64,000 bases of DNA, from positions 62,001 to 126,000 of IMG/VR virus record IMGVR_UViG_3300043410_001892, one strand, 5' to 3'. Below the pieces are notes generated by a model. That model worked only from the letters and a program-made list of their open reading frames with translations, was not told where the DNA came from and made no database searches. Below are positions 1 through 52,900 of this stretch, in pieces. A program made the position numbers and the translations under genes. Position 1 is the first letter of the stretch; each line of letters begins with the position of its first letter.

Positions 1-1003
1 CATCTTCTCTAATAATTGCAGAAAGTCCGGGATGTTTTCTTATTGCAAGATTTCTAAAATTAGGATAATCTTTAATAATATCTCCTGGAGCTCTTAAAAT
101 ATCAATTGGATACTTTTCAATTTGAGTTTCAATTAAAACAGGTTTCTGTTCTGCAACAGTTCGTAGGTCATTAGCAGATAAATCAAAAACAGAAAAGTCA
201 TTAGCAGGTTGGTAAGAATATCTACTACTAATGCCTGAGATTAAATCGCTCAGTATTAGTGCAAGTATATACGGATGGAATTTATTCCCAGGTTTAGCAT
301 TAAAAGGACCTTTTGATTGATAAAGCAATTTATCATCTCTATTCCATTCAAATGTCAATACAGGCCAAACTGGTTTTAAACTGCGAAGACTTAGTAGATA
401 ATTTTCAGATCTTGATGCATTACCGCAGTGTCCCATAGCTTTTGATTCTAGTGGGTGCGTTGAGTGCGGTAACACCCACCAGTTATATTTTCCAACTGGC
501 AAGATTATTGAGTCACCTTCGAGAAGTTCAATATCTGGACGATTATCTAATTCTTGTTGTTTTTTATTATCAGCAATTATCTTTTGTTCTGCTGCAGTTG
601 CATTTGCTATCAATGCGTTTACTGTAGTAGTAGCAGGGCGAATAGCTTTAAGTACATTAGACATGTGTTGATTATTGCCGTAATTGCCTGCAAAGAAATG
701 TGTTAAATCTGTTTGTAGTTTATCAAATCCTTGAAACTGATATTCACCCTCGCCCCACATTTTATTAAATTCTGTTTGAAATGCTGGGTCTTGTGTTTCA
801 TTAAATCTTACAAAATTATTGTACAACAATGTAAACCATTGCAATGCTTGTTCTTTAATAAGTGTAGTTTTAGCCCATGATACTCGTGTGTCAAGTTCTT
901 GTTCACCTGAAGTACCAGGTGCACAGCTAGGTAGGTCAAGTTTCATCTTCCTAACTGTACTAGCATGATTTTCTAATAGAATTTTAAATTCATTAAATCT
1001 CAT
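1..1003 (-). CDS. PcfJ-like domain protein, paralog of 1000..3711; runs off the left edge and is not in the ORF track
   Basis: Manual translation from ATG at 1003 (ATGA overlap with the upstream stop): MRFNEFKILLENHASTVRKMKLDLP...ELDTRVSWAK...LLEGDSIILPVGKYNWWVLPHSTHPLESKAMGHCGNASRSENYLLSLRSLKPVWPVLTFEWNRDDKLLYQSKGPFNAKPGNKFHPYILALILSD. Open to base 1 and colinear with the neighbouring 903-aa protein. Confidence 0.85.
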   Translation of the reverse strand, partial: MRFNEFKILLENHASTVRKMKLDLPSCAPGTSGEQELDTRVSWAKTTLIKEQALQWFTLLYNNFVRFNETQDPAFQTEFNKMWGEGEYQFQGFDKLQTDLTHFFAGNYGNNQHMSNVLKAIRPATTTVNALIANATAAEQKIIADNKKQQELDNRPDIELLEGDSIILPVGKYNWWVLPHSTHPLESKAMGHCGNASRSENYLLSLRSLKPVWPVLTFEWNRDDKLLYQSKGPFNAKPGNKFHPYILALILSDLISGISSRYSYQPANDFSVFDLSANDLRTVAEQKPVLIETQIEKYPIDILRAPGDIIKDYPNFRNLAIRKHPGLSAIIRED

Positions 1004-3711
1004 TGTTGTCCCTCAAACGGATCTGGCCGCCATTGCTGTTGTTCAATGCTTTCTTTCATTTCTCTGATATAATCTTGAAATGCTTCCTCTTCAGTTGGGT
1101 GGCCAGCTATATCACGTAATTCGTTTAATTCTTCCTCACTAAACTTATCCGAGGCTACAACACCATCTATCTGATACATATGAAGTCGCAACGCGGTTGC
1201 AGCTAATTCAAACGTTTGATATCTACTTGGAATTGCAGCAAACGCTCCCCCGTTTTCGCCATTATTGCTATGTTGTATTGTTTTTAAATGTAGCTCATCA
1301 ATTTCTTCGGGAGTAAGAATCTTTGTAAAAACGTTATAATTTAGCCTGTTAATAATACAATCATTGTCAACATCATCATCATGTTCTACACCGGTAAACA
1401 ATACATGTTTTATCAAGTTACGATCAAGTAAGTGATACGGTAGCCAATCAGAAGTTATTAGGTATAATGAATTATTCGCGTCGTCTTCGGCAACAAACTC
1501 TAATGCATCAGTCCAAACGTCTCGAATTTCTTCAGTAGTAAAACTTTCGGGCGGAGTTGGGTTTTCTTCTAACTCAAGGAATTTCCAAGTGTTTCTTGTC
1601 ATCATAAGATTTATACCCTGTAATCTAAGATCCCCGTCTATTAGTTCAGGGTCGGCATACTCTAGTTGGTCTGGGTCTTTTTCAATTGCGTCTTTAGTTA
1701 TTGATTTTAGAAGCTCTATGTTAAACAATCCTTTTGGGATTTCATTTAACTTAAATGGATTATACATTTTACTAGAAAATACTGCAATCCAAGCTTTTTT
1801 TAATATTGCTTTATTTTTAAGAAGATGTTCTGGAAATTCTCTTAAATTATCTGGTTTTGCATAGCATCCCCTGACCCAAAAGTCTGCTTGGGTTTCGTCA
1901 CCATATGAATCAATATACGGGGCAATATTTACGTATTCAGGATGGTTACGTAATGTTTCATTTACAAACTCGTGTTTAAGACTGTTAGATATTAAGGCAT
2001 CTGGTAAATACCTTATTAAATTTGGGAGGCGCCTAATTGCATGTAACCATAGTCTTTCTCTTTCATTTTCGTCTTCAACTAAATCGGGTCTAAATCTTTC
2101 AATATACTCGCCTTGATTGTTACGTACTGCTTTATTTCTTATTTTATCTTTTTCTTCTTCTGGTATTGTAGCATTGACAAACGATTTGTGAACTACTAAA
2201 TGATGATTTTGATCAACTGCTGCGTTCCATAATTCAACTAAATCAGCACCGTCAAACAATCCATTAGGTAGTTTAGTTATTATGCTGCCTTCATCCCGAA
2301 TTTGGCTTTTCCATATATCTTTTTCATCATCTTCTGTGAATAAGTGTACTGGCCAGTCGGGTGTATTCAGATAAAATTTTGCAGCTTTCAACCATGCGGC
2401 TTTAACTTCTTCTCTAGTCCAACCGTCAGTGTTCATTCCTTTAATCAATTGAGGTTGTCTTGATAATGCTAGGTGTGCTAATTCTTTATAATGAGGAGCT
2501 CTATATGGCACTAGTTCAATTGCTGCTGGATTAGCGTTTTCAATTACTGACTTCATTATGTTATAGTTAGCACGTATACGATTATCACAATAACCTAAAT
2601 CACGAGGGTGAGCTATCATATATCTAGTAACTCGTTTTTCCCAATCTTGAAGTGTATTTGGAGCGTAGATAATCATCAGTGGATGTGATTTAATCGATTG
2701 TTCCCAAGTAGCTTCGTCAGTAGAAACATTTCCACTAGTATCAACTAATAAATTAATCCCTGGTAATCTCGTAATAGCAACCTTTCTATAATCTGGATCA
2801 GATCTTACCGATATAGGTGATCGTAAAAAGTCAATTGGGAATTTGTTAATTTGATCTACTATAAGCTTTGGTTTTGCTTGACTAATTTGGTTTATCAAAT
2901 CTTCTTTCATATCAAATATAGAAAAGTCACTACTAGCTTGGTATGATGTTCCGTATATACCTTCAACTATATCACTTAGTAATAATGCTAAAATTGCATA
3001 ATGAAATTTATTTGCTGGTTTAGAATTAGATCTTCCCTTCATTTGATGAAGTTCTTTCCTTTCAGGATTATATTCCATCGTAACCCAAGGCACTGGGGTT
3101 TTATCACGTAAACTTAATAATACACTTGAGCTCTGTGCAGCAGTACCACAATGCCCCATAAACTTAGATTCTGGTTCATGTGATCTAGTAGGTAATAACC
3201 ACCAATCACCTTGCTTACCAAGTGGTAATACTACATGGTCGCCTTCTAATATATCAATTGGAGTTTTATTTTTTAATTCTTCTTCATCAGCTTTTTTAAT
3301 ATCCTCTTCTACTGCTATCAAGTTTTTAACCAATGAATCAACTGTAGTAGTTTGTGCATTGATTCTTGAAAGTAATTGTATAGCGCGATTATCTCTCATA
3401 AATCTTGGAGTACCTAACCAATGATTTAACTCACTTTCAAAAACAGCAAAGTCGTCGATAGGATTTGCACCACCAAGCATACGCTCGTATACTGCTTTAG
3501 CTTTTGGATCAGTATTTTGTTTTAGCCAAGCTTCGTATAATGAAATATACCAAAGCATTGATTGATTTCTATCATTAAATACTTGTTTAGCCCAATTTAC
3601 CCGAGCGTCAATGTCTGCTACGTGGTCTGGAAGTTCAGTTTTAAGTTTGTTTAGTTTGCCATTATAATTTTCAAATAACAATAAATTTTCATATAATTCT
3701 CTTAGGAACAT
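1000..3711 (-). CDS. PcfJ-like domain protein with C-terminal DUF4116-like helical repeats
   Basis: ESKFMGHCGTAA...LLSLRD...VTMEYNP...LHQMKGRSNSKP fits the PcfJ E-x3-M-x-HC...SLR...TxE...QxKGxxN pattern. The C-terminal half has repeated P-x-x-L/I-x-Y/F-x-P units (PNLIRYLPDAL, PDNLREFPEHL, PDQLEYADPEL). Confidence 0.7.
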   Translation of the reverse strand: MFLRELYENLLLFENYNGKLNKLKTELPDHVADIDARVNWAKQVFNDRNQSMLWYISLYEAWLKQNTDPKAKAVYERMLGGANPIDDFAVFESELNHWLGTPRFMRDNRAIQLLSRINAQTTTVDSLVKNLIAVEEDIKKADEEELKNKTPIDILEGDHVVLPLGKQGDWWLLPTRSHEPESKFMGHCGTAAQSSSVLLSLRDKTPVPWVTMEYNPERKELHQMKGRSNSKPANKFHYAILALLLSDIVEGIYGTSYQASSDFSIFDMKEDLINQISQAKPKLIVDQINKFPIDFLRSPISVRSDPDYRKVAITRLPGINLLVDTSGNVSTDEATWEQSIKSHPLMIIYAPNTLQDWEKRVTRYMIAHPRDLGYCDNRIRANYNIMKSVIENANPAAIELVPYRAPHYKELAHLALSRQPQLIKGMNTDGWTREEVKAAWLKAAKFYLNTPDWPVHLFTEDDEKDIWKSQIRDEGSIITKLPNGLFDGADLVELWNAAVDQNHHLVVHKSFVNATIPEEEKDKIRNKAVRNNQGEYIERFRPDLVEDENERERLWLHAIRRLPNLIRYLPDALISNSLKHEFVNETLRNHPEYVNIAPYIDSYGDETQADFWVRGCYAKPDNLREFPEHLLKNKAILKKAWIAVFSSKMYNPFKLNEIPKGLFNIELLKSITKDAIEKDPDQLEYADPELIDGDLRLQGINLMMTRNTWKFLELEENPTPPESFTTEEIRDVWTDALEFVAEDDANNSLYLITSDWLPYHLLDRNLIKHVLFTGVEHDDDVDNDCIINRLNYNVFTKILTPEEIDELHLKTIQHSNNGENGGAFAAIPSRYQTFELAATALRLHMYQIDGVVASDKFSEEELNELRDIAGHPTEEEAFQDYIREMKESIEQQQWRPDPFEGQQ

Positions 3712-3750: not shown

Positions 3751-5145
3751 TTAGTAGTCGTCTACGTCTAAATTATTGATCAAATCTCGCAGTGCAGAGC
3801 TTTGTATACCGGGTTTAACTTTAGCAGTTTCTTCTACTGTAGTTCTGTTTTTAATTGAATTTAATAATGCATTACCTGCTGTTGGTGCAGATGCATTACC
3901 GTACCCTTGATCTTCTTCTATGTCAGTAATTCGTAAAGTATCAATATCATAACCAAGATCAATTTTCATACCAACACCTGAGCTGCTACGTGTTTTCATA
4001 AGTTGGATTTGATATCTACCACGTTCGCGCATTGCTCTACTTGTAAAAATACCAAACACGTTATCAGCAGTTTGAATTTTACTTAACCCACCTGAGATAT
4101 GACTATGGTCAAATTCAACTTCCTCTACCGCTCCTCTATTAAGCTGTGCCGCAGTAACAAATACACAGTTCTTTTCAACTGCTAGATTTCTTAATTCCTC
4201 ACTAACATATTTGTCTTTAATGAATAAGTCAGCTGGACTAATCTTTTTAGATATTGGCATTAGCAAATCTAAATAATCTACTAATAGTACGTCAACTTTA
4301 ATGCCTGATTTAATTTCGTATTCTTTTAAATAACTTCTAATATCGTTAGCTGTTTTGCCTGACGGCATATATTTAACTTGGAATGATCCGGATTTCTTAC
4401 TAATCATTCTAACTTTAAGTTCTACATCATCAATATTTTTAAATACTTCTCTAGTTGAAATACCTGTAAGCATACTATCAATACGCATTGAAACAAGTTC
4501 TTCACTAAGTTCTAATGTTAAGTAAACTACATTCATTCCTGCTAATGCCCAGTTTACACCTAAGTTAGCTAAGAATAATGATTTACCAGCGCCCGATCCA
4601 CCTGCAAAGATATTAAGTTCTCCTCTGTTCATACCGCCAAAGAGTCTATCATCCATGTTTTTCCAACCAGTAGATACTTGTCCGTTTTTATCTTTAATCT
4701 TCATTAGCCGTTCTCTTGGATTAGCAAAATAATCAGTACCAAGATCTTTTTGTAATCCTATTTGTACAGCCTTTTTAATTTTATCTTCAACTGGGCCATA
4801 TTCACCTTTTTCAAGTAAATCAGCTGATTCATTAATAGCTCGCTCGAGGCCTTTATGTCTAATAAATGTTTCAAAGTCTGAAAGTAACCAATCGTAATGC
4901 TCTTCTTTAAGGTTATCAATTTCTTTAAGATCACCTTTTGTTGCTGCATTGATAATATCAAATGTTGGCATTACATTATGTTCGTTTACGTAGTCGTTTA
5001 TAAATTCTGCAGGTTTTTGTAATTTGCGATCAAACAAGGAATGATCAAAAATTGATTGGCATCTAACAAACGTAGCTGCATCACTTATCATCATTTCTAA
5101 ATATAATTTTTGTATATCATAACCATAGTCTACGTTTTGTTTCAT
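3751..5145 (-). CDS. gp41: DnaB-like replicative helicase (T4 gp41-like)
   Basis: Walker A GGSGAGKS, LTLELSEE, VDYLDL, TAAQLNR, KIQTAD and QLMKTRS motifs. Confidence 0.95.
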   Translation of the reverse strand: MKQNVDYGYDIQKLYLEMMISDAATFVRCQSIFDHSLFDRKLQKPAEFINDYVNEHNVMPTFDIINAATKGDLKEIDNLKEEHYDWLLSDFETFIRHKGLERAINESADLLEKGEYGPVEDKIKKAVQIGLQKDLGTDYFANPRERLMKIKDKNGQVSTGWKNMDDRLFGGMNRGELNIFAGGSGAGKSLFLANLGVNWALAGMNVVYLTLELSEELVSMRIDSMLTGISTREVFKNIDDVELKVRMISKKSGSFQVKYMPSGKTANDIRSYLKEYEIKSGIKVDVLLVDYLDLLMPISKKISPADLFIKDKYVSEELRNLAVEKNCVFVTAAQLNRGAVEEVEFDHSHISGGLSKIQTADNVFGIFTSRAMRERGRYQIQLMKTRSSSGVGMKIDLGYDIDTLRITDIEEDQGYGNASAPTAGNALLNSIKNRTTVEETAKVKPGIQSSALRDLINNLDVDDY

Positions 5146-5166: not shown

Positions 5167-5194
5167 AGTACGTTATGCACCTACATAACGTACT
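5167..5194. terminator. Inverted repeat between the DUF2490-like gene and the helicase
   Basis: AGTACGTTATG-cacctA-CATAACGTACT, 11-bp stem; no clear U-tract. Confidence 0.45.
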
Positions 5195-5204
5195 CGTACA
5201 TCAA

Positions 5205-5903
5205 TTACTTAAACACGTCGCCGTATAGTGATACACTTAAGATATGCGCCATTCGATCGTAATTATTTTCACGATTCATATATTGATTTAAATAACCAAT
5301 TTCAGTTCTGTAGTTATCGTTAAATTTATAACCAACTCCAACAAACCCTCTATTTTGATCAAAACCAGATACTGGACCCCAGTTAGTTTTATTAACATTA
5401 GCAAAGAATTCTTCTGATGCAATCAGTGACCATTTTTTGTTAAGGTTATGTGTTAGTTTAGCTTGTTCACGGAATCTAACACTAGTATCGTCACTAATAT
5501 CTACAGTACGTTCTTCTAAGCGTGATCTAAAGGTTAGCGTATCAGAGTTATCAAAGTTATATCTATATTCATGTTGTTGCCAAGCACGTTGTTCATCTAG
5601 TGGTTTTTTAGCGTATGGCGGTTCACCGTACTGATATGCATAACCAAAGATTACTTTATTGTTATCTGTAAGTTGATAGCCTAACCCAATCCGCCCAACT
5701 AAGCCGTGAATATCAAATCCAGGATCATGAATTGATTTAGGGTTATCTGTTGCACGAGCAGAACCTTCTGCATAATACAATGCTTTTGAATTAGCAATGT
5801 TACCAGAAAGTACAACTGTCCCCCATGTTCCAAATAATTCTTCAGTACTAGCAGTTGCTACTACTGGTAATAATAATGTCAATAATAATAAAAGTTTTTT
5901 CAT
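5205..5903 (-). CDS. DUF2490-like outer-membrane beta-barrel protein with signal peptide
   Basis: Signal peptide MKKLLLLLTLLLPVVATA. Amphipathic strands and DUF2490-typical motifs RIGLGYQL, EQRAWQQ, RSRLEER, RFREQAKL, SEEFF, FDQNRGFVGVGYKF, EIGYLNQY. Confidence 0.85.
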   Translation of the reverse strand: MKKLLLLLTLLLPVVATASTEELFGTWGTVVLSGNIANSKALYYAEGSARATDNPKSIHDPGFDIHGLVGRIGLGYQLTDNNKVIFGYAYQYGEPPYAKKPLDEQRAWQQHEYRYNFDNSDTLTFRSRLEERTVDISDDTSVRFREQAKLTHNLNKKWSLIASEEFFANVNKTNWGPVSGFDQNRGFVGVGYKFNDNYRTEIGYLNQYMNRENNYDRMAHILSVSLYGDVFK

Positions 5904-6883
5904 AAATCTACCTCTTTAAAAAAATTCTTAGCTCTTAATTGAATTTTAAGAGCATAGCTTTGCCGTGATTCAATGATTAGCCATAGTGTAGCCAATCGTC
6001 CAAGTTTAGTAACAGCATCGTTTACGTCTTTTATGCCTTCGGGCCATTCTGGCATACTTACTGACCATCCGTAATCGATTGCTTGTTCTACAGTTTTAAT
6101 GCCTTCGTGATCTCTATCCGGAACTAATATAATTTCTTTATAAAATCTTTTTAGTAACCAATTTTGTTTATCGTTTATTTCGCAACCTAATATTGCACAG
6201 CCATCAATGCTAATTGCATCAAGTGTACCTTCGCATACTATAATAAATTTTCGATCATGTGTTTGTCGATCAAGATTAAAAACAAACCCAGGTTGTTGTT
6301 CTGATAAGTATCGTGGTCCATGATTAGGGTCAACACTTCTTGCTGTGTACCCAACTAAACGATTTTCATAGTAATATGGTATAATCAATCTTTTATTATA
6401 TTTGACATGTGAACTCCAATGAAATGGATAATCATCCAAATATAAATTTCGACTGTTCATATATTCCAATACTGGAATAAGTTTATCTGGTATATTGTTT
6501 AAGTAAGTTGTAATAGGTTTTGCGTTGTATGGCAAAGTCTTTGTTTCAAAAGACGGAATTAACGTTTCTATTTGTAGAAGTTCTGAGGCTTCTACTCTAA
6601 ATGCTTCACGTGTTAGTTTAGAAATTTCACTATCGCTTATATTAAGAAAGCGCATAAAATCTTTTACTCTTTTGCTTATATGCCGACCTGGTTGCCAACT
6701 TGCTTTAAACCCACAATTAAAGCAATGGTAAGATAAACCTCCATCATTGTTAGTAATAAAGCCACCACGACTTCTTGTATCCTGGCAACAAGGTGCGTTG
6801 CCAGTGATCCATCCGCTTGGTGTTTTTTTAGTTCGCCTACCAGTTTGCCAGTATACAAGTAATGTATCTGTAATTAAGTTCAT
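5900..6883 (-). CDS. gp61: DNA primase (T4 gp61-like): Zn-binding domain plus TOPRIM
   Basis: N-terminal CCQD...HCFNCG; TOPRIM CEGTLDA and PDRDHEG; KDVND. Confidence 0.9.
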   Translation of the reverse strand: MNLITDTLLVYWQTGRRTKKTPSGWITGNAPCCQDTRSRGGFITNNDGGLSYHCFNCGFKASWQPGRHISKRVKDFMRFLNISDSEISKLTREAFRVEASELLQIETLIPSFETKTLPYNAKPITTYLNNIPDKLIPVLEYMNSRNLYLDDYPFHWSSHVKYNKRLIIPYYYENRLVGYTARSVDPNHGPRYLSEQQPGFVFNLDRQTHDRKFIIVCEGTLDAISIDGCAILGCEINDKQNWLLKRFYKEIILVPDRDHEGIKTVEQAIDYGWSVSMPEWPEGIKDVNDAVTKLGRLATLWLIIESRQSYALKIQLRAKNFFKEVDL

Positions 6884-6909: not shown

Positions 6910-6938
6910 ATTATACTATAACACAGTAACGCTGTCAA
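6910..6938 (-). promoter_or_regulatory. Consensus sigma70 promoter for the primase-porin-helicase genes
   Basis: Minus strand TTGACA-N17-TATAAT (plus 6933-6938 and 6910-6915), mostly embedded in the 3' end of the upstream gene. Confidence 0.85.
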
Positions 6939-8677: not shown

Positions 8678-8725
8678 TTGTAGTGAACCTCCAGTGTAAG
8701 TTTATTTCAATCTCAATATTTATGC

Positions 8726-9418
8726 TCATAGCGAACTCTCCTTAACCACAGTTTTTACAAGTTCTACATCGCTTGCATTCTTTTTAAACTTATCAAACCA
8801 AAATGGTAAATCTAATACAGCACTAACAGCTGCCAATTGTTCGTCATTAAATTTTTTAATCATTAGCTTACCTGAATTTGAGTTTAAAATAAGCCATGGG
8901 CTAATCTTACCATCTTTAATATCATACATTGTTCTATTTAAACTAGCATATAAGAAATAATGATTCCATTGTGAATCATGAGTATCGGCCCATGTTATCA
9001 TATGCGATATACTACGTTCTAATGCAGTATCAACACATTCAGTTTTAATTAGATTAACTACGTATTTGTCATACAAATCATCTTTACACCAGTGATCAAG
9101 TTTAGCTCCACTTGTTACTACATATTCTATAAACTTTTCAGGATATAATGGTTTTACGTTACTAATAAAACTACCAAACTTTACAAACGCATTATAGTAT
9201 GGACTTTTACAAAAATCCTCATATGTTTTTGAACCATTAAAGTTTTGAGTTTTTTGAAAAAATATGTTGTATGTTCGAAACCCTATCACAACGTGTTTAG
9301 CAGATTTTGCTAATGCTCTACGTTTTTGTTCGCAGACATGCACTGCAAGAGTAGATTCTTTTACGAATTTACTTTTACAGTACTGACATACAAATGGTTT
9401 AGATGCGTCAACTTTCAT
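8726..9418 (-). CDS. Hypothetical protein with N-terminal zinc finger
   Basis: FVCQYCKSKFVKESTLAVHVC (C-x2-C-x12-H-x-C). Confidence 0.65.
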   Translation of the reverse strand: MKVDASKPFVCQYCKSKFVKESTLAVHVCEQKRRALAKSAKHVVIGFRTYNIFFQKTQNFNGSKTYEDFCKSPYYNAFVKFGSFISNVKPLYPEKFIEYVVTSGAKLDHWCKDDLYDKYVVNLIKTECVDTALERSISHMITWADTHDSQWNHYFLYASLNRTMYDIKDGKISPWLILNSNSGKLMIKKFNDEQLAAVSAVLDLPFWFDKFKKNASDVELVKTVVKESSL

Positions 9419-13102: not shown

Positions 13103-13558
13103 TTAAAGGGTTGCGTCTTCCATGCCTGCACATCTTAATCGTATAATGTTGCTCAATGCATACGATTTCTGATCTAAGGCTTTAGTAATACCTAACCATT
13201 GATTTCGTAGTAATGCAAATTCGTTAATGATAAGTTCATATTCAATTACATCATCTTCACCATCGACATACTTTTCACAATCACGACTACTCAATGCTCT
13301 TGCGTATGTTTCTAAGTATTTTTTAAAATGATAACTGCGTAATCGTTTAAGTTCTATATTAAGGAACTCTAAGACAGCTTCAATCTCTTGAAGCTGTCCA
13401 TATCTGTGTTCTACAATGCCCGGCATTGCTGCAGTTGCACGTTCTACATTACCTGTTATTTTACATTCTTCTTTAGCAGTTGTCAACTCAGATTGGTAAT
13501 ATACAATACCATCGGGCAATTTAGTTATATCTTTTGAGATTGTAGAATACCAACCCAT
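13103..13558 (-). CDS. uvsY: Recombination mediator UvsY
   Basis: Helical 151-aa protein with YARALSSRDCEKYVDGEDD and KALDQKSYALSNIIRLRCAG; lies in the uvsX operon. Confidence 0.85.
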   Translation of the reverse strand: MGWYSTISKDITKLPDGIVYYQSELTTAKEECKITGNVERATAAMPGIVEHRYGQLQEIEAVLEFLNIELKRLRSYHFKKYLETYARALSSRDCEKYVDGEDDVIEYELIINEFALLRNQWLGITKALDQKSYALSNIIRLRCAGMEDATL

Positions 13559-30095: not shown

Positions 30096-30124
30096 ATTAT
30101 ATGATCATTTTATCAAAAAGTCAA
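30096..30124 (-). promoter_or_regulatory. Sigma70-type promoter for dNMP kinase
   Basis: TTGACT-N17-TATAAT, then AGGAG and the ATG. Confidence 0.8.
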
Positions 30125-43967: not shown

Positions 43968-46900
43968 TTATATAATTGTTAAACTACTTATTACGCGAAC
44001 TGAAATTGTATCAGTAGCTGCTGCAGCTTGGGCAAGAATTCTTACATTTCCGCTATTAATATCACAGGTAAATGTTGCTAACATAGCACCACCTGATACT
44101 GTTGATATATCACCATATTCTACCATATATGCATTTGTTCCATTATGCAATACAAGTATTTCTGCAACTTGATATGTATTCAAATTTGATCCAGAACTTG
44201 CTGTACAATTAGCTTGTACTATGAACTTAGCACTTCTATATGTTGTCGCTGAAAATGATTTAATAGTAGTAGGAGTAGTTGTAATTCCAGTTACAACTGT
44301 ACCTTGTACTTCCAGATCAGTTTTAATTACTACTGAATTTACAAAAGTAGCAAGGCCATTCCCGTCAATTGTTAATCTTGTAGTAGCACTTTGTGTAATA
44401 TCACCTGATGTTCCAGGAGCTCCTGTTTTAATTATAAAGTTACCAGTGGTACCTGTTCCTGTTGCTAAACCTGGAGTAATTGTAAAATCACTTGCGGAAA
44501 TATTAGTTCCAACTGCATTTTCACCTTTAAGGGTTGCAGCAACTGGTGTTGCACTTGCTTCGCTACTACCTAATGTAACCGTTTTATTTCTTAATAATAA
44601 TGTATTGATTTTTTCAATAGTTCCAACACGCGGTGACGATGACAATGTAATTATTGTTGCTATTTTAACAGTAAATGACGATGATGAACTACCTGCACTT
44701 GTCACAGGCCATGTTCCGTCTAAGTTAGCAATGCCTGATGAAGCTATTGTTACTTGATCACCTGCTTTAATACCTAAACTTGTATTGGTATGTGCAAAAA
44801 CAACGGTTGTTAATGAAGTAAGATCAGTTGAAATTGCGTTGCTAAGATACACCGATGTTGCATCAATACCTGTTACAAGTGTATTTGATGGTATACCTGC
44901 TGCAGATTGAACTAATTGTCCAATTACAATTCCAGTTGTACCTGAAAATGTTAATTTTGTACTTGAGCTTGTGGCTGCTGTGAATAGAGCAAATCCAGTT
45001 CCGCCTGTATATACAGTACCAACACCTGCGACCGTGCTTAATGTAGTACCAGTATTTGCATACGTAAATGTTGTTGTATTAACTACCGTTACTACTGATA
45101 AATTTAATCCATTAAATGTTGTATTGTTACATACAATCGTAACAGTATCACCAGAAGTTAATCCATGTGCAGTTGAAGTAACAATAGTTGCAATATTGCT
45201 GCCATTTCTTGCAACAGTTGAAATTACTAATGCTGATGATATAACTGCACTAATTGAAGTTGTAGCACTACCTGATGTGGTATAATTCTTAACGATTGTA
45301 GTAAATGATCTAGTATTTGAACTTGCACCAATTACTACACTGCTTGCAGATCCACCTACATTTATTGATAATGCATTAGTGTTGAATACATTTGCAGTAC
45401 CTGTGGAAACAGTTTGTATTTCTCCAGAATTAGTTTTAACTATAGTTGCTAATGTTAATGAATCTGCCCAGTATGGCAATGAACCATTACTGCTTAAAAT
45501 TGTATTTGCTGGGCCAATTGCTAATTTACTAAGTGAAGATGCATTATTAGCATAGAGTAAATCGCCTGCTGTATAACCAGTTAAACCAGTACCACCTTTA
45601 TCTACTGGTATTGAACCAGTAAAGTTAGCTGGATCTAAGAAGTATGATGAATCATAAGTATCAAGTGTACCTGCATCAACAACACCGGCTTTAATAAACA
45701 CACGCCCAGCGGTATTTCCAGTACCAACATCAAATTGCAAGACGTTAAATTGTGCTACACCCATAGTTGAATAATCACTATTATCAGTTGGGAAAGTTGC
45801 TTTTGCAATATCCATTGTAACTGCACCGTAGTACGGTGATACACCAGTTCCGCCAAGTGTTATTATAGATGTGTTAGATTTTAAACTGGCAACAGCAGTT
45901 GCCCAAGATGAATCACCTCGTAAATATGTACTTGAATTTGCAGTTCCAGAACTTGCTAATCGACTAGTTGAAATTGTTCCAGAAACGATGTTACTTGCAT
46001 CAACACCTGATGTAGTTAAAAGTCCCCAGTTTGATAAATTTTTACCACTAGTATTTGAGAACCCAATTATTTGTACTTGATCATGAATTAACCAATAAGT
46101 GTTTGAACCGGTTGAACTAAAATCAACTGCTGCAATAGTAGAACCTGATACACTTACTAACGAATCTGCTCTATAAAAATGTAAAGTAAATGAATTAGTA
46201 GTAACTGATCCAATAAAGAATGTTTGTCTATCAGTTATTTGTATAATAGATCCAGATAACAAATAAGACGGTAACGTTGATCCTGTAATCGTTACAGCAT
46301 CACCTGTTGCTAATCCATGACTTGCAACATATATTCTGTTGTTAGTGGTATTAACTGTACTAATTGTTAAAGTGTGGCTACCTGTTGAACTTGTACCTAA
46401 TGTTACATACGTAGCACCATTGTATTCAGTTGATAATCTAAATGTATTAGCCGATAGCACTATAATATAATACGGTGTAACAATAGATAAATTACCAATT
46501 GCAGGATTTACACCTGGGCTATATATAACTGGGTCACCATTTGATAATCCATGTGAGTTAATTGTGATTATATTATTAACATAATCAACTGCTGATGCAG
46601 CATTAAATGTTTTTGTTATAGTAGTACTAACAGTTATTGGTAACCAAGAACTATTGTTATCAGTAACAAAATCTGGTGAATTTGAAGATCCAGTAAACTG
46701 CCCACCTGTCATATTATTGATATACAGTCTAGTTTCAACTGTTGATACTGTTATACTAAATCCAGAACCAACCGGTAATGATGCTGATAATGTATTGCCA
46801 ATTCCGTAACCTGTACCTGCATATACTAAATCAACTGCGGTAACTGCTCCACCTGTTACTGTAATATTTGCTAATGCGCCAGACCCTGCACCGCCTGTAA

Positions 46901-49900
46901 GTGCAACACGAGAGTAAGATCCATTAGTGTATAATGATCCACCTGATATTGTTAGATTGTTTACAACAACTACCATTCCTCTGCGCACTTCATATACTTC
47001 GCCTTGTGCTTGAGAACTTGCTGCAGTGATTACAGAATTTACAGTTCCAGTTTCAGATACTGGGGTAATAAATGTTAATGCTGCCGTGCTTGTTGATGTC
47101 ACTGACGATGTTGTTGGAAAAGTAACAGTAAAGGTACGTGGACTTGCAGACATGTTAACTGCAGAAATAATAGATCCAAGAGGTAACCCGCCACCAAACA
47201 CATAATCATTTACATTTATAGTTCCGGATAATGCAGCACTTGCTACTGTTCCAGTTGTAGTTGATGCATTTGATGCTGCATTGATAGTTGCTGTAGCAGT
47301 AGTAGTTGCTGATGCAGTAGTTGCAGTATCAGTATTTGGATAACTAAACTTCGTTGTTGTTAAAACAGTAACATACGGTGAAGTGTTATACGATGTCAAC
47401 GTGGTTGCAGTAACCTTAACTTGATTATTTGTAACTAAATTATGAGCTGCAGTTGTGATCACATAAGCAATATTGTTATATCGTATTACTGAGCTGATAG
47501 TTGCATTTGTATAGGTGTACGTACCGTTGTATGGAATTACTAAGTATTGATTAGTTGATGAATCTCTTAATACGTTTGTATCATTTGCTTCAACTGCGGC
47601 GCTAACTGCAGAACAATAAACTGAAGTATTTGTTGTGCTTGGTGTTGCATCTCCGCCAATTGTTAGTATATGTGCGCTGTTAGTATCAAATGATACGCTA
47701 AAAGTTTCATATTGACTTGCAATTACTACAGTTGTACTGTTCGTAACATCACCTTTAATGTAACCAGTTGCTCCACTTGTATCTTGTGTAACTAATGCAA
47801 AATCTAAAGCAGTAATTGGTAGGCTTAACGTAATAGTAACTGTTTGGAATTTTTCAGTACAAGTGTCGCCTGCTATAAAACTAACAGACGGAACATCTTC
47901 GTATGCAGTTAACCGTGAATGATAACCTAATCTAATAAGTGCAGTTGGTGCTCGTTGTGCCGGAATCAAATCATTATTAATTTGTCCAGCCGAGTTAAGT
48001 TGAACAACTGCACCTGGTACTGCGTTTGTGCTAACTGATTTATCAATAAATGATCCTAATCGAGTTTTAAGATAAGTCCACATAGCAAGCTGTGTGCTTA
48101 ATTTATTATTAGCTGGTCCACTGATTTCGTTTTCACCTAATCCAATATCGCTGCTAATTGCATCAATTGAAATATCACTTAATGCTAATTTTAATACATT
48201 TAACTGGCTAACTGTAACTGTATTTTTAAATACGATATTACCTGTTCTGTTGTAAGCAGTAATAAAGTTACCAACTTGGAAGTCACCTAATTCGTTAGTT
48301 CCTGATGAGTAAACTCGTCCTGCGTTCTCTTCAAATTGTTGGAAAGCAGGGTAACCTTGTCCACCGTTAACTGGTAATGCATTATAGTCAATACCAGAAC
48401 CTGCATATTCCCATGTATGACCTGATGAGTTAACAATACTTGGTCTATGGAAATAAACTTTCTTACCTGGTAATGAGTTAATATTGTTTAATGATCCATC
48501 TAACAATGATGGCATTACTGTAAATGTTGCACCATATAAGTCACTTCTTAATGTTACAGAAGTAACACTAATTGCTGGACTAAACACATCTGAACCAGCT
48601 TTAGTTATAGTTGATCCAGCTGCAAATAATTTTCTAATTGGATTGTTATAAATGGTAACAACATTGATTGCAACTACTAATGTATTTTCTCCATCAAAGC
48701 TATAAACGTTTGCACTATTTGGTTGTCCAGTTGTTACACCTTCAAGTTTTTGTCCAGGAACAAATGTATAGGTATTGTTATTAAGAACAATAGTTTGGAA
48801 TACATGATGTGTTTCTATTACATCATCAACAAATAATTCGTAGTCGTTTTTAACGATTGAATGTAAACCGGTACTAGTGCGTGTAACATTAAGTAATAAT
48901 GATAAACTATTATCATGTGCCAATTTAAATTGTGTAGTGTTCAAAAATACTACATAGTATTGGCTACCTGTAAACATACCACCAAGCGGTACTTGATTAT
49001 TTGTATTGTAAACAACCGCATCACCATTTACAAATCCATGTGGACTGCTTGTTGTGAAGATATCATTTACTATATCAATTTCAGTTGCAGCATTAAATGT
49101 CACTTCTAAGTAACTTGGTGATCTTGTTTTATAATTTGAAGTAAGATCAAGTGGTCCAAATTGTGTAGAAATATAATCAGTTACAAATGTTTTGATTGCA
49201 TCTTTATTAGTTTGTAAAATTGTACTTTGAACTACTAAATTCGTATCTTCAACCCAACCTACACCTGGTTCAAATACTGATGGTTCAGTCCCAGTGCTAA
49301 CCATTATGCGTAACTCTTCAAGTCTTGCAACAACAAATGCAGTTGCATCTACTGACCCTGGATTACCACTAATGTATTGCCCATTACCAGCTCCGTATCT
49401 TAGTGCAACATAGTTAGATATTTCAGTTTGACTTGCACCTTTATTAGAAACTAAGTTGCTGTTTTGAGTAGTTAAGTTTGAACTAACCCATGATGTACTT
49501 GGAGAAATAACAGTTGGTTCAACACCTGTACTAACCATTACACGCAATTCTTCTAAACGAGCAACTGCAAACGTAACTGCATCTGATGAAGCAGCAGTTC
49601 CACTAATTACTTGTGTTGCACTACCAGTAACTGAAGTTATATAAGTTGTAACTGCAGTTTGACTTGTTGATTTATTTGTAACTAGTGTACTATTTTGAGT
49701 AGTTAAGTTTGAACTAACCCAAGTAGTGCTAGGCGAAATAACACTTGGTTCAGTTCCGGCACTAACCATTACACGTAATTCTTCTAAACGAGCTACTGTA
49801 AAAGTAACTGCATCAGTAGAACCTGCATTTCCGCTTACTACTTGAGTTGTTACATTTCCAGTTGATTTAGTCCAAGATGTATTATTAGTTAGAATGCTTC

Positions 49901-52900
49901 CAATGATTGCTTTTAGTCTTACATAAACTGCAGTCAATGCAGTTTGTTGATCACCTACTTCAACTAGTGTGCCTGTTTGTTGATTTTTATATAATCTAGC
50001 ACATACTGCAGTTTCTAAGTTGCCACCATATACTAAATCATAACGTATGGCATCAACAATATAACCTATATCACGAGTACATAATGATTTTTGAGTTTGT
50101 GTAAACCCAGACCAAAGTGTGTTATAATTTGTGTTTAAGTACGCAGTTACTTCGTCTTGAATAAATGCTTTATTTGCATAAAGTAATCGGGCTGCATCTG
50201 AAAAACCAGTTAAAATGTTAGATGGTTCAGGCAAAACTACCGCAGGAACTACACTTAAACCATTGTTGATTATATTGATAATTGTGTTTAAACTGTTAGT
50301 AACTGATGTTGCAGCAGGTGCATATCCGCTAACTTGTGTAGCTAAGTAATCTCTCAAATAAGTAAATGCATCAACTGTGATTGCTTTTTCAGTACTTAAT
50401 AAGTTAGCTGATTGAGCAGTATAATAGCTCATACCAGCTTTAATAGATCTAAAGTTAGATCCAAACATCATATCATATCGCAACGCATCGATAACAAATC
50501 CAACATCTCGCTGACATAAAGATGAGTCATAAACAAATGCACTTGTTGTCCAAGATGTATTATTGGTTAAAATATTGCCAATAATTGCTTTTAATCTTGC
50601 GTATACCGCAGTAACAGCAGTTAGTTGGAGTGCAGGTTCAACTAATACACCAGTTTTTTGATTTTTATATAATCTAGCACATACTGAAGTTTCTAAGTTA
50701 CCGCCGTAAATTAAGTCATAACGTATGGCATCAACAATATAACCCATATCGCGCTTACATAATAATTTTTGAGCAGGTGTTAAACCTAACCAAGTTGACG
50801 TGTAGTTAGCCAGTAAATACCCACTTACTTCGTCTTGTATAAATGCCTTGTTAGCATTGATTATACGAGCTGCGTTTGAGAAACTTGCAACGATGTTAGA
50901 TGGTTCAGGTAATGTAATAGTAGGAACAGCACTTAAACCAGTATTGATAATACTAATAATAGTGTTCATATTATCAGTTACTGATGTTGCTGCAGCTGAG
51001 TAACCACTAACTTGTGCAGCAATATAATCTCTTAAGTGTGTAAATGCATCAATTGACGCAGCTTTTTCATCACCGACTACTGCAGATGCTTGGGCAGTAT
51101 AATAGCTCATACCTGCTTTAATAGATCTAAAGTTAGATCCAAACATCATATCATAACGAACTGCATCAATAATAAAACCAACATCTCGTTGACACAGTGT
51201 TGGATCATATGCAACTGATGATTTAGTCCAAGATGTATTATTAGTTAGAATATTTCCAATAATTGCTTTTAATCTTGCGTATACCGCAGTTACTGCCGCT
51301 TGTTCTGATGAATCTTCAACTAACACTCCAGTTAACTGATTTTTATATAACCGTGCTGCTACCGCAGTTTCTAAGTTGCCACCGTATATTAAGTCATACC
51401 GTATTGCATCAACAACATAGCCCATATCACGTTTACATAATGTGCGTTGATTATCAGTTAAACTAGTCCATAATGATTGGTAATTTGCATATAAGTAAGC
51501 AGTTACTTCGTCTTGAATGAACGATTTATTAGCATAAAGTAGTCGAGCTGCATCTGAAAAACCTGATAATAACGTAGGTGGTTCTGGAAGTACAGCAGTA
51601 GGAACAGCACTTAACCCATTAGTAATAATATTGATAATGGTATTCATGTTATTGACTACAGAAGTACCAGCAAGTGGGTCACCATTTACTGCGTTTGCTA
51701 TATAATCTCTTAAGAATACATACGCTGCAATGGTTGCATCTTTTTCAGATCCAATTACATTTGATGATTGTGCAGTGTAGTAACTCATACCTGCTTTAAT
51801 AGATCTAAAGTTAGATCCAAACATCATATCATATCGAATTGCATCAATAATAAAACCAACATCTCGTTGGCAGATATCAACATCATAAGTAAAGTTAGCT
51901 GTATTGCTGTATACTCGAATAATATATTGTTGTACAGGACCATCTGGTCTAGTAAAACCAATAACGGTTAACGTTTGGTTAACTCCTGAGTAACCAACTT
52001 CAGTAACAATACCTCTATCAAATGTAAATGAAGTAGGTGAAAACCCTGACGATCTAAGAGCATATATACCAAAGTTAGTAGCAGAATTAGTAATAGACGC
52101 ATAACCGCCGCTTTGTGTATACACACCATTTAATGCAAACAGTTGGAAACATGATACTAATTGAACGTAAGCTTCGTTAACAACACGCCATGCAGTACCA
52201 CCAAATAAGATCATTGTAAACGCTGCAGCAACCATTGACTTACATTGTACTGGAACAGCACCGGTTGGATTAACTTCAACCTCTAATAAGCTAACTGGAA
52301 CGTTAGGGTTAGCAATCTTTCCACCATCAATGTATGCTCCGTTACCACCTAAGAAGCTAAGAGCTGTACAGTTTTGAATATACGGTGATAATGTCATTAA
52401 TGGTTTAGTTGTAGGTAAGTTAATATACCCACTACGATCGGTGTTTGTATCAAAAACATCGTCAAATGCAACAGCATAGTCCCATGTGTATGATGCAATC
52501 CCATTTGCATCAACACCATCTCTAAATGTAAATTCAGAAAAGTAACAACCATTTCTAACTCTAAATAAGTCTTTATTTGCGTTTAATGGTCGGAAGATAC
52601 ATGAACGCAATGCTGCACCAATAACACTTACGTTATCTGGTATAATAATTGGGTTATCTTCAATATATTCACCAGCAGCTACGTTGACTACTACTCTTGT
52701 ACCGTTTGGTGCTTTTACTGAGTTGTAAACAAGTCCTGATGCAATTTGCAAACCTCGTTTAAGTGTTCTTACTGGAGAAGTAATACCGTCATTAGTATCA
52801 CTACCTTTAGTGGCTGAAACGTAAATGCAGTTACCTCCAAAGGTATCAGAGTCAGTAAATGCTAAATTTCCATTACCATCAGTTGATATTATTTGTCCTG

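What the first reader, a model, noticed from the sequence alone, without database searches (positions are those of the whole stretch)
5205..5903. Phage-encoded outer-membrane beta-barrel inserted between primase and helicase
Seen: a signal peptide and DUF2490-like barrel whose start overlaps the primase stop, downstream of a perfect sigma70 promoter. Inference: expressed early and inserted into the host outer membrane, so the host is diderm. It could increase nutrient or ion uptake during infection, or mediate receptor interference or superinfection exclusion. An envelope gene inside a core primosome pair is unusual.
Basis: partly seen in the sequence, partly recalled or inferred. Interest (0 to 1): 0.62.

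Follow-up and report, generated by a model that had tools for sequence, protein, structure and literature searches.

The report
Methanotroph jumbo phage carries outer-membrane barrel
A 372-kb phage of methane-oxidising bacteria carries an intact, host-derived gene for a small outer-membrane barrel protein of an uncharacterised family (DUF2490). The gene sits in a frequently swapped cargo slot between the phage's primase and helicase genes, which makes it a rare but not unprecedented kind of phage "accessory" gene.

Summary
Window 5205-5903 (minus strand) encodes a 232-aa protein with a Sec-type signal peptide and a full-length DUF2490 domain (PF10677, E 1e-43). Its ATG overlaps the primase stop (ATGA), and a perfect sigma70 promoter (6938-6910) lies upstream of the primase.

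- **Fold:** the AF2 model (pLDDT 92) is an outer-membrane beta-barrel, closest to 12-stranded barrels (PcoB, NanC, KdgM; Z 14-15).
- **Genome:** a complete 372-kb jumbo myophage that also carries pmoC, 86-87% identical to Methylomicrobium PmoC. The host is therefore a diderm gammaproteobacterial methanotroph.
- **Phage clade:** the gene belongs to a phage-only DUF2490 clade of 15 protein clusters found in three genomic contexts. It is under purifying selection, its GC matches the phage's, and it is sister to Methylococcaceae homologues.
- **Rarity:** no relative is found in INPHARED or PHROGs.
- **The slot:** among 78 related phages, 61 carry a carbamoyltransferase-like gene between primase and helicase, 14 carry nothing, and none carries DUF2490. 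The position is a cargo hotspot, not a breach of a fixed pair.

Function is unproven. Most likely the protein keeps the host's DUF2490 channel-like role during infection; superinfection exclusion is the main rival. I rate it a new member of a known kind, of moderate interest.

The parts
6910..6938 (-). Host sigma70-type promoter (TTGACA-17 nt-TATAAT, 12/12) driving the primase-barrel-helicase unit
   Evidence: There are 25 perfect sites genome-wide. The site is conserved upstream of the primase in 46 of 79 relatives at no more than 1 mismatch, against 1 of 400 control windows.
5900..6883 (-). DNA primase (Toprim), 327 aa
   Evidence: phrog_47 E 6e-44; Toprim_2 E 2.4e-7
5911..5914 (-). GAGG Shine-Dalgarno of the barrel gene, inside the last codons of the primase, 7 nt before the ATG
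   Evidence: Read from the sequence
5205..5903 (-). DUF2490-family outer-membrane beta-barrel gene, 232 aa; its ATG overlaps the primase stop (ATGA)
   Evidence: PF10677 E 1.2e-43. AF2 pLDDT 91.8, pTM 0.84. Z 13-15 to 12-stranded outer-membrane barrels. dN/dS 0.04-0.30 among phage copies.
5850..5903 (-). Signal-peptide coding part (residues 1-18, cleavage predicted after A-T-A)
   Evidence: Sequence inspection. The signal peptide is conserved in all phage copies. The barrel starts at residue 20 in the model.
5167..5194 (-). 12-bp RNA hairpin in the 59-nt spacer after the barrel gene (attenuator, terminator or stabiliser)
   Evidence: Minimum free energy -17.8 kcal/mol, z -2.96. It is kept in the 79%-identical relative L002 through compensatory changes and is followed there by a T7 run.
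3751..5145 (-). DnaB-like replicative helicase, 464 aa
   Evidence: phrog_19 E 6.4e-69; DnaB_C E 5e-18

Best explanation
The gene is an intact, selected, host-derived cargo gene of a pmoC-carrying jumbo myophage that infects gammaproteobacterial methanotrophs (Methylococcales).

Proposed mechanism:
1. Host RNA polymerase starts at the conserved sigma70 promoter at 6938-6910 and transcribes primase, barrel gene and helicase together.
2. The barrel gene is translated from its own GAGG ribosome-binding site, coupled to the primase stop (ATGA).
3. The precursor is exported by host Sec and cleaved after Ala18.
4. Host BAM assembles it into the outer membrane as a compact barrel of about 214 aa. All its loops are short (10 aa or fewer), and one face of the strands, by alternation the lumen face, carries an invariant Arg/Glu network.
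5. The phage copy is collinear with bacterial homologues and keeps every family-invariant residue. It therefore most likely does what the host's own DUF2490 paralogue does, a specific small-solute or ion pathway (TCDB lists the family as a putative porin). It would top up or replace that envelope function during infection, as the same phage's pmoC is thought to do for methane oxidation.

Shown here: the gene, its family, the signal-peptide features, the fold class, promoter conservation, purifying selection, the phage clade, and the host group.

Inferred: outer-membrane localisation, early or middle timing, and channel activity.

My confidence that this is a functional phage-borne DUF2490 barrel gene is about 0.9. 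The 0.5 below is for the whole mechanism, including 'retains the host-like channel role'.
For: - **Family and fold.** PF10677 at 149 bits. AF2 pLDDT 91.8. The model agrees with independent ESM Atlas models at TM 0.90 and 0.84. The best solved matches are all outer-membrane barrels: PcoB Z 15.2, VhGalP 14.5, NanC 14.4, KdgM 13.7, COG4313 13.2.
- **Conserved residues.** E104, R126, R128, E130, R132, R143, R145, E165, R185 and E201 are invariant in 60 sequences and alternate with hydrophobic positions within the strands. A published census reports a buried 2-Arg/2-Glu/Tyr network in 238 modelled DUF2490 proteins and Sec signal peptides in 51 of 60 sampled ones (bioRxiv 10.64898/2026.07.29.741452).
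- **Retention of ancestral form.** There are no length differences in the mature barrel apart from one loop residue, and only four clade-specific substitutions at conserved sites.
- **Selection and residence time.** dN/dS is 0.04-0.30. GC 34.6% and GC3 20.6% equal those of the flanking phage genes, whereas the bacterial sisters have 57-59% GC.
- **Phage clade.** 15 protein clusters form a clade with 98% support, found in three contexts: primase-helicase, MazG-RNR, and a small-ORF region.
- **Host.** pmoC is in the same genome at 404 bits and is 86-87% identical to Methylomicrobium/Methylotuvimicrobium PmoC, against about 50% to Nitrosomonas AmoC. The sister sequences come from Methylococcaceae MAGs.
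- **Promoter.**
- **Not an assembly chimera.** An independent contig is 99.93% identical over 11.9 kb, and a 79%-identical relative is collinear across both junctions.
Against: - No DUF2490 protein has a demonstrated function or a solved structure, so 'channel' rests on fold class and a TCDB label.
- The invariant charge network may be a buried structural core that closes the lumen rather than a conduit.
- DSSP counts 11 strands in the model, an odd number that is atypical for bacterial outer-membrane barrels, while the matched folds have 12. I could not inspect coordinates, so strand count and pore size are unresolved.
- Bacterial gene neighbourhoods show no conserved partner that would point to a substrate.
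- The gene is absent from close relatives of the same phage, so it is dispensable.
Confidence: 0.5

Rival explanations
1. Superinfection exclusion or receptor interference. The barrel is placed in the infected cell's outer membrane to block adsorption or DNA entry of competing phages, or of progeny. It might do so by masking or displacing a receptor, possibly the host's own DUF2490 paralogue.
For: - Presence is patchy even among near relatives and the slot turns over rapidly, as is typical of conflict cargo.
- The same gene has spread to at least three phage genomic contexts and a second phage lineage.
- It is expressed from a host-type promoter.
- From established knowledge, envelope proteins made by phages often serve exclusion (T5 Llp, Cor).
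Against: - All loops are 10 aa or shorter and are not remodelled relative to bacterial homologues. Conservation is concentrated on the charged face of the strands rather than in the loops, which fits a retained intrinsic activity better than a new surface interaction.
- No PADLOC match.
- dN/dS is low throughout, with no sign of diversifying selection.
Confidence: 0.2
2. A non-conducting envelope barrel. The Arg/Glu network plugs the lumen, and the protein acts as a structural or anchoring element, for example to stabilise or remodel the outer membrane during the long jumbo-phage cycle or to prime it for lysis or vesiculation.
For: - The published census describes the network as buried, with relative solvent accessibility 0.04-0.05.
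- In a sister phage context the gene sits next to a Band_7/SPFH membrane-scaffold gene.
- The barrel is very compact, with minimal loops.
Against: - The nearest solved folds by Z are mostly open 12-stranded channels: PcoB, NanC, KdgM, GalP, COG4313.
- TCDB lists the family as a putative porin.
- No periplasmic or peptidoglycan-binding domain is attached.
Confidence: 0.2
3. A functionless passenger or an artefact: a recently captured host fragment, a decaying gene, or a chimeric assembly.
For: The gene is missing from most relatives, and no expression data are available.
Against: - The ORF is intact, with a signal peptide and all invariant residues.
- dN/dS is 0.14 against a 75%-identical syntenic copy.
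- Its GC matches the phage's.
- The same junctions appear in an independent 99.93%-identical contig and in a 79%-identical relative seen on 8 contigs.
Confidence: 0.03

Closest known systems
Bacterial DUF2490 family (Pfam PF10677; TCDB 1.B.81 'putative porin', function not established)
   Same: Full-length HMM match, the same length, a Sec signal peptide, all 21 invariant residues, and the same predicted barrel (TM 0.84 to a bacterial cluster model).
   Different: It is encoded by a lytic-type jumbo phage and forms a phage-only clade with phage-like GC. It carries four clade-specific substitutions: D23L, Q131E, G137S, D174N.
Phage-encoded outer-membrane proteins (lambda Lom of the Ail/Lom family, the porin Lc of phage PA-2; other barrels in BFVD such as DUF481, OmpC-like, Opa-like and the Aeromonas phage phiAS5 'outer membrane protein')
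   Same: A phage genome encodes a Sec-exported beta-barrel destined for the host outer membrane. BFVD holds several such phage barrels. Lom and Lc are from established knowledge.
   Different: It belongs to a different family: no Pfam hit other than DUF2490, and only TM about 0.5 to any BFVD model. Lom and Lc are prophage lysogenic-conversion genes, whereas this gene sits in a replication operon of a 372-kb phage. No DUF2490 is found in PHROGs or in 50,697 INPHARED genomes.
12-stranded outer-membrane channels PcoB, NanC/KdgM/GalP and COG4313 (PDB 7pge, 2wjr, 4pr7, 8xua, 4rl8)
   Same: The best structural matches, Z 13-15, rmsd 2.9-3.8 A over 158-204 residues, spanning the whole mature protein.
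   Different: Sequence identity is 7-11%, with no sequence or profile homology. DSSP finds 11 strands in the model, not 12. The Z values are tied, so no substrate can be transferred from any one of them.
pmoC-phages: large freshwater phages carrying host-derived pmoC (Chen et al. 2020, PMC7674155)
   Same: This genome carries pmoC and falls in the reported size range (159-527 kb). The predicted hosts there include Methylobacter and Methyloparacoccus. The barrel gene is a second host-derived membrane-protein gene in such a phage.
   Different: The paper's main text does not contain the terms 'outer membrane', 'porin' or 'primase'. The DUF2490 cargo is not a described feature of these phages.
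Superinfection-exclusion envelope proteins (T5 Llp, phi80/N15 Cor)
   Same: A phage-made envelope protein expressed during infection; a possible functional analogue under the rival explanation (established knowledge).
   Different: Those are small lipoproteins that bind the receptor FhuA. This protein has no lipobox, is a full barrel, and is homologous to a widespread bacterial family.

Membership tests
DUF2490 (PF10677) | Score above Pfam's gathering threshold over the whole domain | tested here: met
   149.4 bits against a 29.8-bit cut-off, HMM positions 1-184 of 186
DUF2490 (PF10677) | Family-invariant residues, including the Arg/Glu network | tested here: met
   21 invariant columns in a 60-sequence alignment, all present in the window protein
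DUF2490 (PF10677) | N-terminal Sec signal peptide | tested here: met
   By inspection: MKK, then a 12-residue hydrophobic core, then ATA|S. It is conserved in all phage copies. SignalP itself was not available.
Outer-membrane beta-barrel (fold class) | Closed antiparallel barrel resembling solved outer-membrane proteins | tested here: met
   pLDDT 91.8. The top 13 VIA-align hits are all outer-membrane barrels, Z 11.8-15.2. ESM Atlas models agree at TM 0.90 and 0.84.
Outer-membrane beta-barrel (fold class) | Even strand number, with both termini periplasmic | tested here: inconclusive
   DSSP gives 11 strands, the first 16 residues long, while the matches have 12 strands.
Outer-membrane beta-barrel (fold class) | Localisation in the outer membrane | not testable with these tools
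   Needs fractionation or heat-modifiability assays
Porin / channel (TCDB 1.B.81) | Solute or ion conductance | not testable with these tools
   The TCDB label is itself putative (PMC4827864)
KdgM/NanC, PcoB/CopB, Ail/Lom, general porin families | Sequence-profile membership | tested here: not met
   No Pfam hit other than DUF2490 at E <= 0.1. The profile search of PDB sequences finds no homologue.
Known anti-phage defence / exclusion proteins (PADLOC) | Match to a PADLOC model | tested here: not met
   No family at E <= 0.01
Known phage protein families (PHROGs v4) | Match to a PHROG | tested here: not met
   0 families at E <= 0.01. tblastn against 50,697 phage genomes gives no match.
pmoC-phage (genome-level class) | The phage genome encodes PmoC affiliated with methanotroph PmoC | tested here: met
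   PF04896 at 404 bits, at G000:C1:249671-250387. It is 86-87% identical to Methylomicrobium/Methylotuvimicrobium PmoC.

The most novel reading that the evidence does not exclude
The barrel is a true auxiliary metabolic partner of the phage's pmoC. It would be a phage-supplied outer-membrane conduit that raises the flux of something limiting for methane oxidation during infection.

Two candidate substrates, both only leads:
- Copper: the top structural match is the copper channel PcoB, tied with others.
- A small C1 or anionic metabolite such as formate: in 7 Methylococcaceae loci the host homologue lies directly downstream of group-4 [NiFe]-hydrogenase-like genes.

If true, phages would reprogramme not only a methane monooxygenase subunit but also envelope permeability in methanotrophs. 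It would also give the first functional handle on the DUF2490 family.
Probability: 0.1. Interest if true: 0.75.

Novelty: new member of a known kind. Interest (0 to 1): 0.45.

Why it matters
- Phage-encoded outer-membrane proteins are known, but mostly from prophages of enteric bacteria. This is a host-derived barrel of an uncharacterised family, kept under selection in large lytic-type phages of environmental methanotrophs, in the same genome as pmoC.
- It adds independent support for the host assignment, marks the primase-helicase junction as a cargo hotspot in a phage family with more than 600 matching IMG/VR stretches, and gives a compact, tractable entry point for working out what DUF2490 barrels do.
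- If the protein alters envelope permeability during infection, that would bear on how phages modulate methane oxidation in lakes.

Tried and rejected
- **Sequencing runs.** No read-level check of the junctions or of expression was possible, and read laying was not used. Independent contigs were used instead.
- **Single-sequence fold.** The AF2 fold of the mature protein, meant to settle the strand number, failed (pLDDT 32) and is uninformative.
- **Searches that found nothing.** The profile search of PDB sequences found no solved homologue. NCBIfam and PADLOC gave no hit. PHROGs and tblastn against INPHARED gave no phage relative.
- **Bacterial neighbourhoods.** Clustering neighbours in 80 genomes found no conserved partner; the largest neighbour cluster occurs in 8 loci. 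Guilt by association therefore gives only a weak lead: hydrogenase-like genes upstream in 7 loci.
- **Literature.** Three papers mention DUF2490 and a fourth mentions PF10677 only by accession. None is about phages and none establishes a function.
- **Rejected: loop trimming or surface remodelling.** I looked for shortened or remodelled surface loops in the phage copy and found none.
- **Rejected: an ammonia-oxidiser host (amoC-phage).** The phage PmoC is only about 50% identical to Nitrosomonas AmoC, against 86-87% to methanotroph PmoC.
- **Rejected: DUF2490 fixed in this lineage.** The two carriers are not sisters on the primase+helicase tree.

Full report
**1. The observation**

The finding's coordinates frame a minus-strand ORF, 5205..5903, of 232 codons.

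- The N-terminus reads MKKLLLLLTLLLPVVATA|STEE. It has two lysines, a 12-residue hydrophobic core and an A-x-A cleavage motif. The protein contains no cysteine, so this is a Sec/SPase-I type signal and not a lipoprotein signal (read from the sequence; SignalP was not available).
- Pfam gives one hit, DUF2490 (PF10677): E 1.2e-43, 149 bits against a 29.8-bit cut-off, over HMM positions 1-184 of 186.
- Upstream on the same strand is a Toprim primase, 5900..6883 (phrog_47, E 6e-44). Downstream is a DnaB-like helicase, 3751..5145 (phrog_19, E 6e-69).
- The barrel gene's ATG overlaps the primase stop (ATGA at 5903-5900). A GAGG Shine-Dalgarno lies 7 nt upstream, inside the primase's last codons.

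The 'perfect sigma70 promoter' is real: TTGACA-17-TATAAT at 6938..6910 on the minus strand. It lies about 20 nt before the primase ATG, so it would drive primase, barrel gene and helicase together.

- One perfect site in 64 kb is not significant alone (expected 0.16; 15 of 100 shuffles have at least one).
- The 372-kb genome has 25 perfect sites, against about 1 expected when that rate is scaled.
- The site upstream of the primase is conserved across relatives while its spacer varies. Of 79 loci, 26 are perfect and 46 have at most 1 mismatch, against 1 of 400 control windows.

I take it as a genuine promoter read by host RNA polymerase.

**2. What the genome is**

The window is bases 62,001-126,000 of a 372,173-bp IMG/VR virus record with direct terminal repeats, rated 100% complete, at 35.5% GC.

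- The window also encodes a DEAD-box helicase, UvsX-like recombinase, SSB, large terminase, tail sheath and virion proteins. This is a jumbo myophage.
- The helicase DNA is distantly similar (about 67%) to Pseudomonas PA5oct-like jumbo phages.
- Outside the window the genome carries pmoC/amoC (PF04896, 404 bits). Its product is 86-87% identical to PmoC of Methylomicrobium and Methylotuvimicrobium, and about 50% identical to Nitrosomonas AmoC.
- It is therefore a 'pmoC-phage' of the kind described from freshwater lakes (Chen et al. 2020, PMC7674155). Its host is a gammaproteobacterial methanotroph, which is diderm.

**3. The protein**

With a 60-sequence alignment, AlphaFold2 gives a confident model (pLDDT 91.8, pTM 0.84).

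- The model has a signal-peptide helix, then beta-strands joined by loops of only 4-10 residues.
- ESM Atlas models, an independent predictor, superpose at TM 0.90 (own cluster) and 0.84 (a bacterial cluster).
- Against 48,161 PDB representatives the best matches are all outer-membrane barrels. The top of the list is 12-stranded: PcoB Z 15.2, VhGalP 14.5, NanC 14.4, KdgM 13.7, COG4313 channel 13.2, then FapF and autotransporter barrels (Foldseek agrees). These Z values are tied, so no substrate can be inferred.
- There is no solved homologue by sequence profile.
- DSSP counts 11 strands, the first 16 residues long. That parity is atypical, and I could not inspect coordinates, so strand number and pore remain open. 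A single-sequence refold failed.
- Conservation is striking. E104, R126, R128, E130, R132, R143, R145, E165, R185 and E201 are invariant and alternate with hydrophobic positions. By that alternation they should face the lumen.
- A 2026 preprint independently reports a buried two-Arg/two-Glu/Tyr network in 238 modelled DUF2490 proteins and Sec signal peptides in 51 of 60 sampled ones.
- TCDB lists the family as a putative porin (1.B.81) of unestablished function.

**4. Relatives and history**

The word search found 226 relatives.

- A maximum-likelihood tree of 137 sequences places the window protein in a clade of 15 clusters (98% support). Wherever context is known, these are phage-borne.
- That clade lies within a 38-row clade (100% support) whose cellular members are Methylococcaceae MAGs.
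- The phage clade occurs in three contexts. The first is primase-DUF2490-helicase: this phage, a 99.93%-identical contig L012, and the 75%-identical L002 seen on 8 contigs. The second is between MazG and ribonucleotide reductase, sometimes next to a Band_7 gene (L006, L007, L011). The third is a small-ORF region (L004, L005).
- A second, 39%-identical lineage sits in a 259-kb viral contig beside a metallophosphoesterase and a GT4 glycosyltransferase (L013, L014).
- The ESM Atlas cluster holding this protein has 63 members; 63% of those with a taxon record are viral.
- In contrast, PHROGs v4 has no matching family, and tblastn against 50,697 deposited phage genomes finds nothing.
- Among phage copies dN/dS is 0.04-0.30 (0.14 against the syntenic L002 at dS about 1.0).
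- The gene's GC and GC3 (34.6% and 20.6%) equal those of primase and helicase, whereas the bacterial sisters have 57-59% GC.
- The mature barrel is collinear with bacterial homologues. It has only four clade-specific substitutions at conserved sites (D23L, Q131E, G137S, D174N) and no loop remodelling.

Taken together, this is an old, functional, host-derived gene circulating among large phages of methanotrophs.

**5. The slot**

More than 600 IMG/VR stretches match this helicase; I examined the best 80.

- Of the 78 loci that also show the primase, none has DUF2490 between the two genes.
- 61 carry a carbamoyltransferase-N-like gene (phrog_1601). 14 have nothing, among them four of the closest relatives. 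In one of these, L097, I checked that the primase ORF overlaps the helicase start.
- A few loci add a 2OG-Fe(II) oxygenase, an FkbM methyltransferase or unknown genes.
- On a primase+helicase tree the nearest clade (7 rows, 100% support) mixes all three states, and the two DUF2490 carriers are not sisters. The slot changes state at least 11 times over 79 rows.

So the gene does not break into an inviolable primosome pair. It occupies a recombination-prone cargo site.

The cassette brings a 59-nt spacer with a 12-bp hairpin (5167-5194; -17.8 kcal/mol, z -2.96). L002 keeps this hairpin through compensatory changes and follows it with a T7 run. It may attenuate read-through into the helicase or stabilise the transcript.

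**6. Mechanism**

The most likely sequence of events (confidence 0.5 for the whole chain) is as follows.

1. Host polymerase transcribes the unit from the conserved promoter.
2. The precursor is exported by Sec, cleaved after Ala18, and inserted by BAM into the host outer membrane.
3. There it performs the same, still unknown, small-solute or ion function as the host's DUF2490 paralogue, supplementing the envelope during infection much as pmoC is thought to supplement methane oxidation.

The family, fold class, signal-peptide features, promoter conservation, selection and host are shown. Localisation, timing and transport are inferred.

Rivals:
- Superinfection exclusion or receptor interference (0.2). 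The patchy distribution and slot turnover favour it. The loop-poor, unremodelled surface with conservation on the charged strand face, and the lack of a PADLOC hit, count against it.
- A sealed, structural barrel (0.2). The published 'buried network' description and the Band_7 neighbour favour it.
- A passenger or artefact (0.03). Selection and independent assemblies count against it.

Bacterial neighbourhoods give no conserved partner. The only recurring pattern is that in 7 Methylococcaceae loci the gene follows group-4 [NiFe]-hydrogenase-like genes. That is a lead only.

**7. Comparison and novelty**

The protein is a bona fide member of DUF2490.

- It works like, but is not a member of, the 12-stranded channel families.
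- As a phenomenon it belongs with phage-encoded outer-membrane proteins. Lambda Lom and the PA-2 porin Lc are examples from established knowledge, and BFVD holds various phage barrels.
- It also belongs with the host-derived membrane genes of pmoC-phages.
- It appears to be the first DUF2490 noted in phages. Only four papers in the library mention the family by name or accession, and none in a phage context.

Rating: new member of a known kind, interest 0.45.

**8. Limits**

- No reads or transcript data could be obtained.
- Several members of the sister clade are short metagenomic contigs of unknown origin. Two 'MAG' contigs in it (L018, L019) have phage-like GC, so the exact bacterial donor is not fixed beyond Methylococcaceae.
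- The tree was built with the 'quick' method and rooted at the midpoint. The direction of transfer (bacterium to phage) is inferred from the family's broad bacterial range, 4,234 UniProt members according to the preprint's census.

Noticed in passing
G000:C1:249671-250387 (-), outside the window; locus L176:1489-2259 (-): The same phage genome carries pmoC (PF04896, 404 bits). Its product is 86-87% identical to Methylomicrobium/Methylotuvimicrobium PmoC and about 50% identical to Nitrosomonas AmoC. This makes it a pmoC-phage of a gammaproteobacterial methanotroph.
   Followed up: partly
Whole genome G000; in the window 6910-6938, with one-mismatch sites at 13458-13486 and 30096-30124 (all minus strand): There are 25 perfect TTGACA-N16-18-TATAAT sites in 372 kb, about 1 expected by scaling. 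Most are on the minus strand between 180 and 350 kb, and many have a TG-extended -10. The phage evidently relies heavily on host sigma70 promoters.
   Followed up: partly
Related loci L095-L174, between primase and helicase (e.g. L096:3823-4764): In 61 of 78 related phages the primase-helicase slot holds a carbamoyltransferase-N-like gene (PF02543, phrog_1601). Others add a 2OG-Fe(II) oxygenase (L128:2851-3396), an FkbM methyltransferase (L151:4184-4864) or unknown ORFs. The junction is a hotspot for cargo, possibly including DNA- or nucleotide-modification genes.
   Followed up: partly
window 5167-5194 (-); L002 about 8705-8735: A 12-bp hairpin lies after the barrel gene. It is conserved in a 79%-identical relative through compensatory base changes, and a T7 run follows it there but not in this window. 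It may be a terminator or attenuator that travels with the cassette.
   Followed up: partly
L018 (CAIVQX010000176.1) and L019 (CAJAHC010000002.1): Two contigs binned as Methylococcaceae MAGs have 35-38% GC. They group in the tree next to the clade that holds the viral contigs L013/L014. They are probably phage contigs mis-binned with their host.
   Followed up: no
L013:5507-8083 and L014:5953-8469 (the L014 contig is 259 kb): A second, 39%-identical phage lineage carries DUF2490 immediately upstream of a calcineurin-like metallophosphoesterase and a GT4 glycosyltransferase. Its neighbours include a SegE-like GIY-YIG endonuclease, NT5C and an M15 peptidase.
   Followed up: partly
L009, L010, L023, L024, L025, L041, L063: In these Methylococcaceae-type loci the bacterial DUF2490 gene lies directly downstream, on the same strand, of group-4 [NiFe]-hydrogenase-like genes (Proton_antipo_M, Complex1_49kDa/NiFeSe, Oxidored_q6). 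This is a possible functional lead for the family.
   Followed up: no
L006:4459-5304 and L011:5350-6195: In the MazG-RNR context phages, a Band_7/SPFH membrane-scaffold gene lies next to (L006) or within one short ORF of (L011) the DUF2490 gene.
   Followed up: no
window 1000-3711 (-): A 903-aa ORF lies just downstream of the helicase. It has no PHROG hit and only a weak DUF4116 repeat hit. It is conserved in the near-identical contig L012, while L002 has a 588-aa gene at the same position whose relationship was not checked.
   Followed up: no
window 43968-53483 (-): A very large ORF of 3,171 aa lies in the structural region. It was not examined.
   Followed up: no
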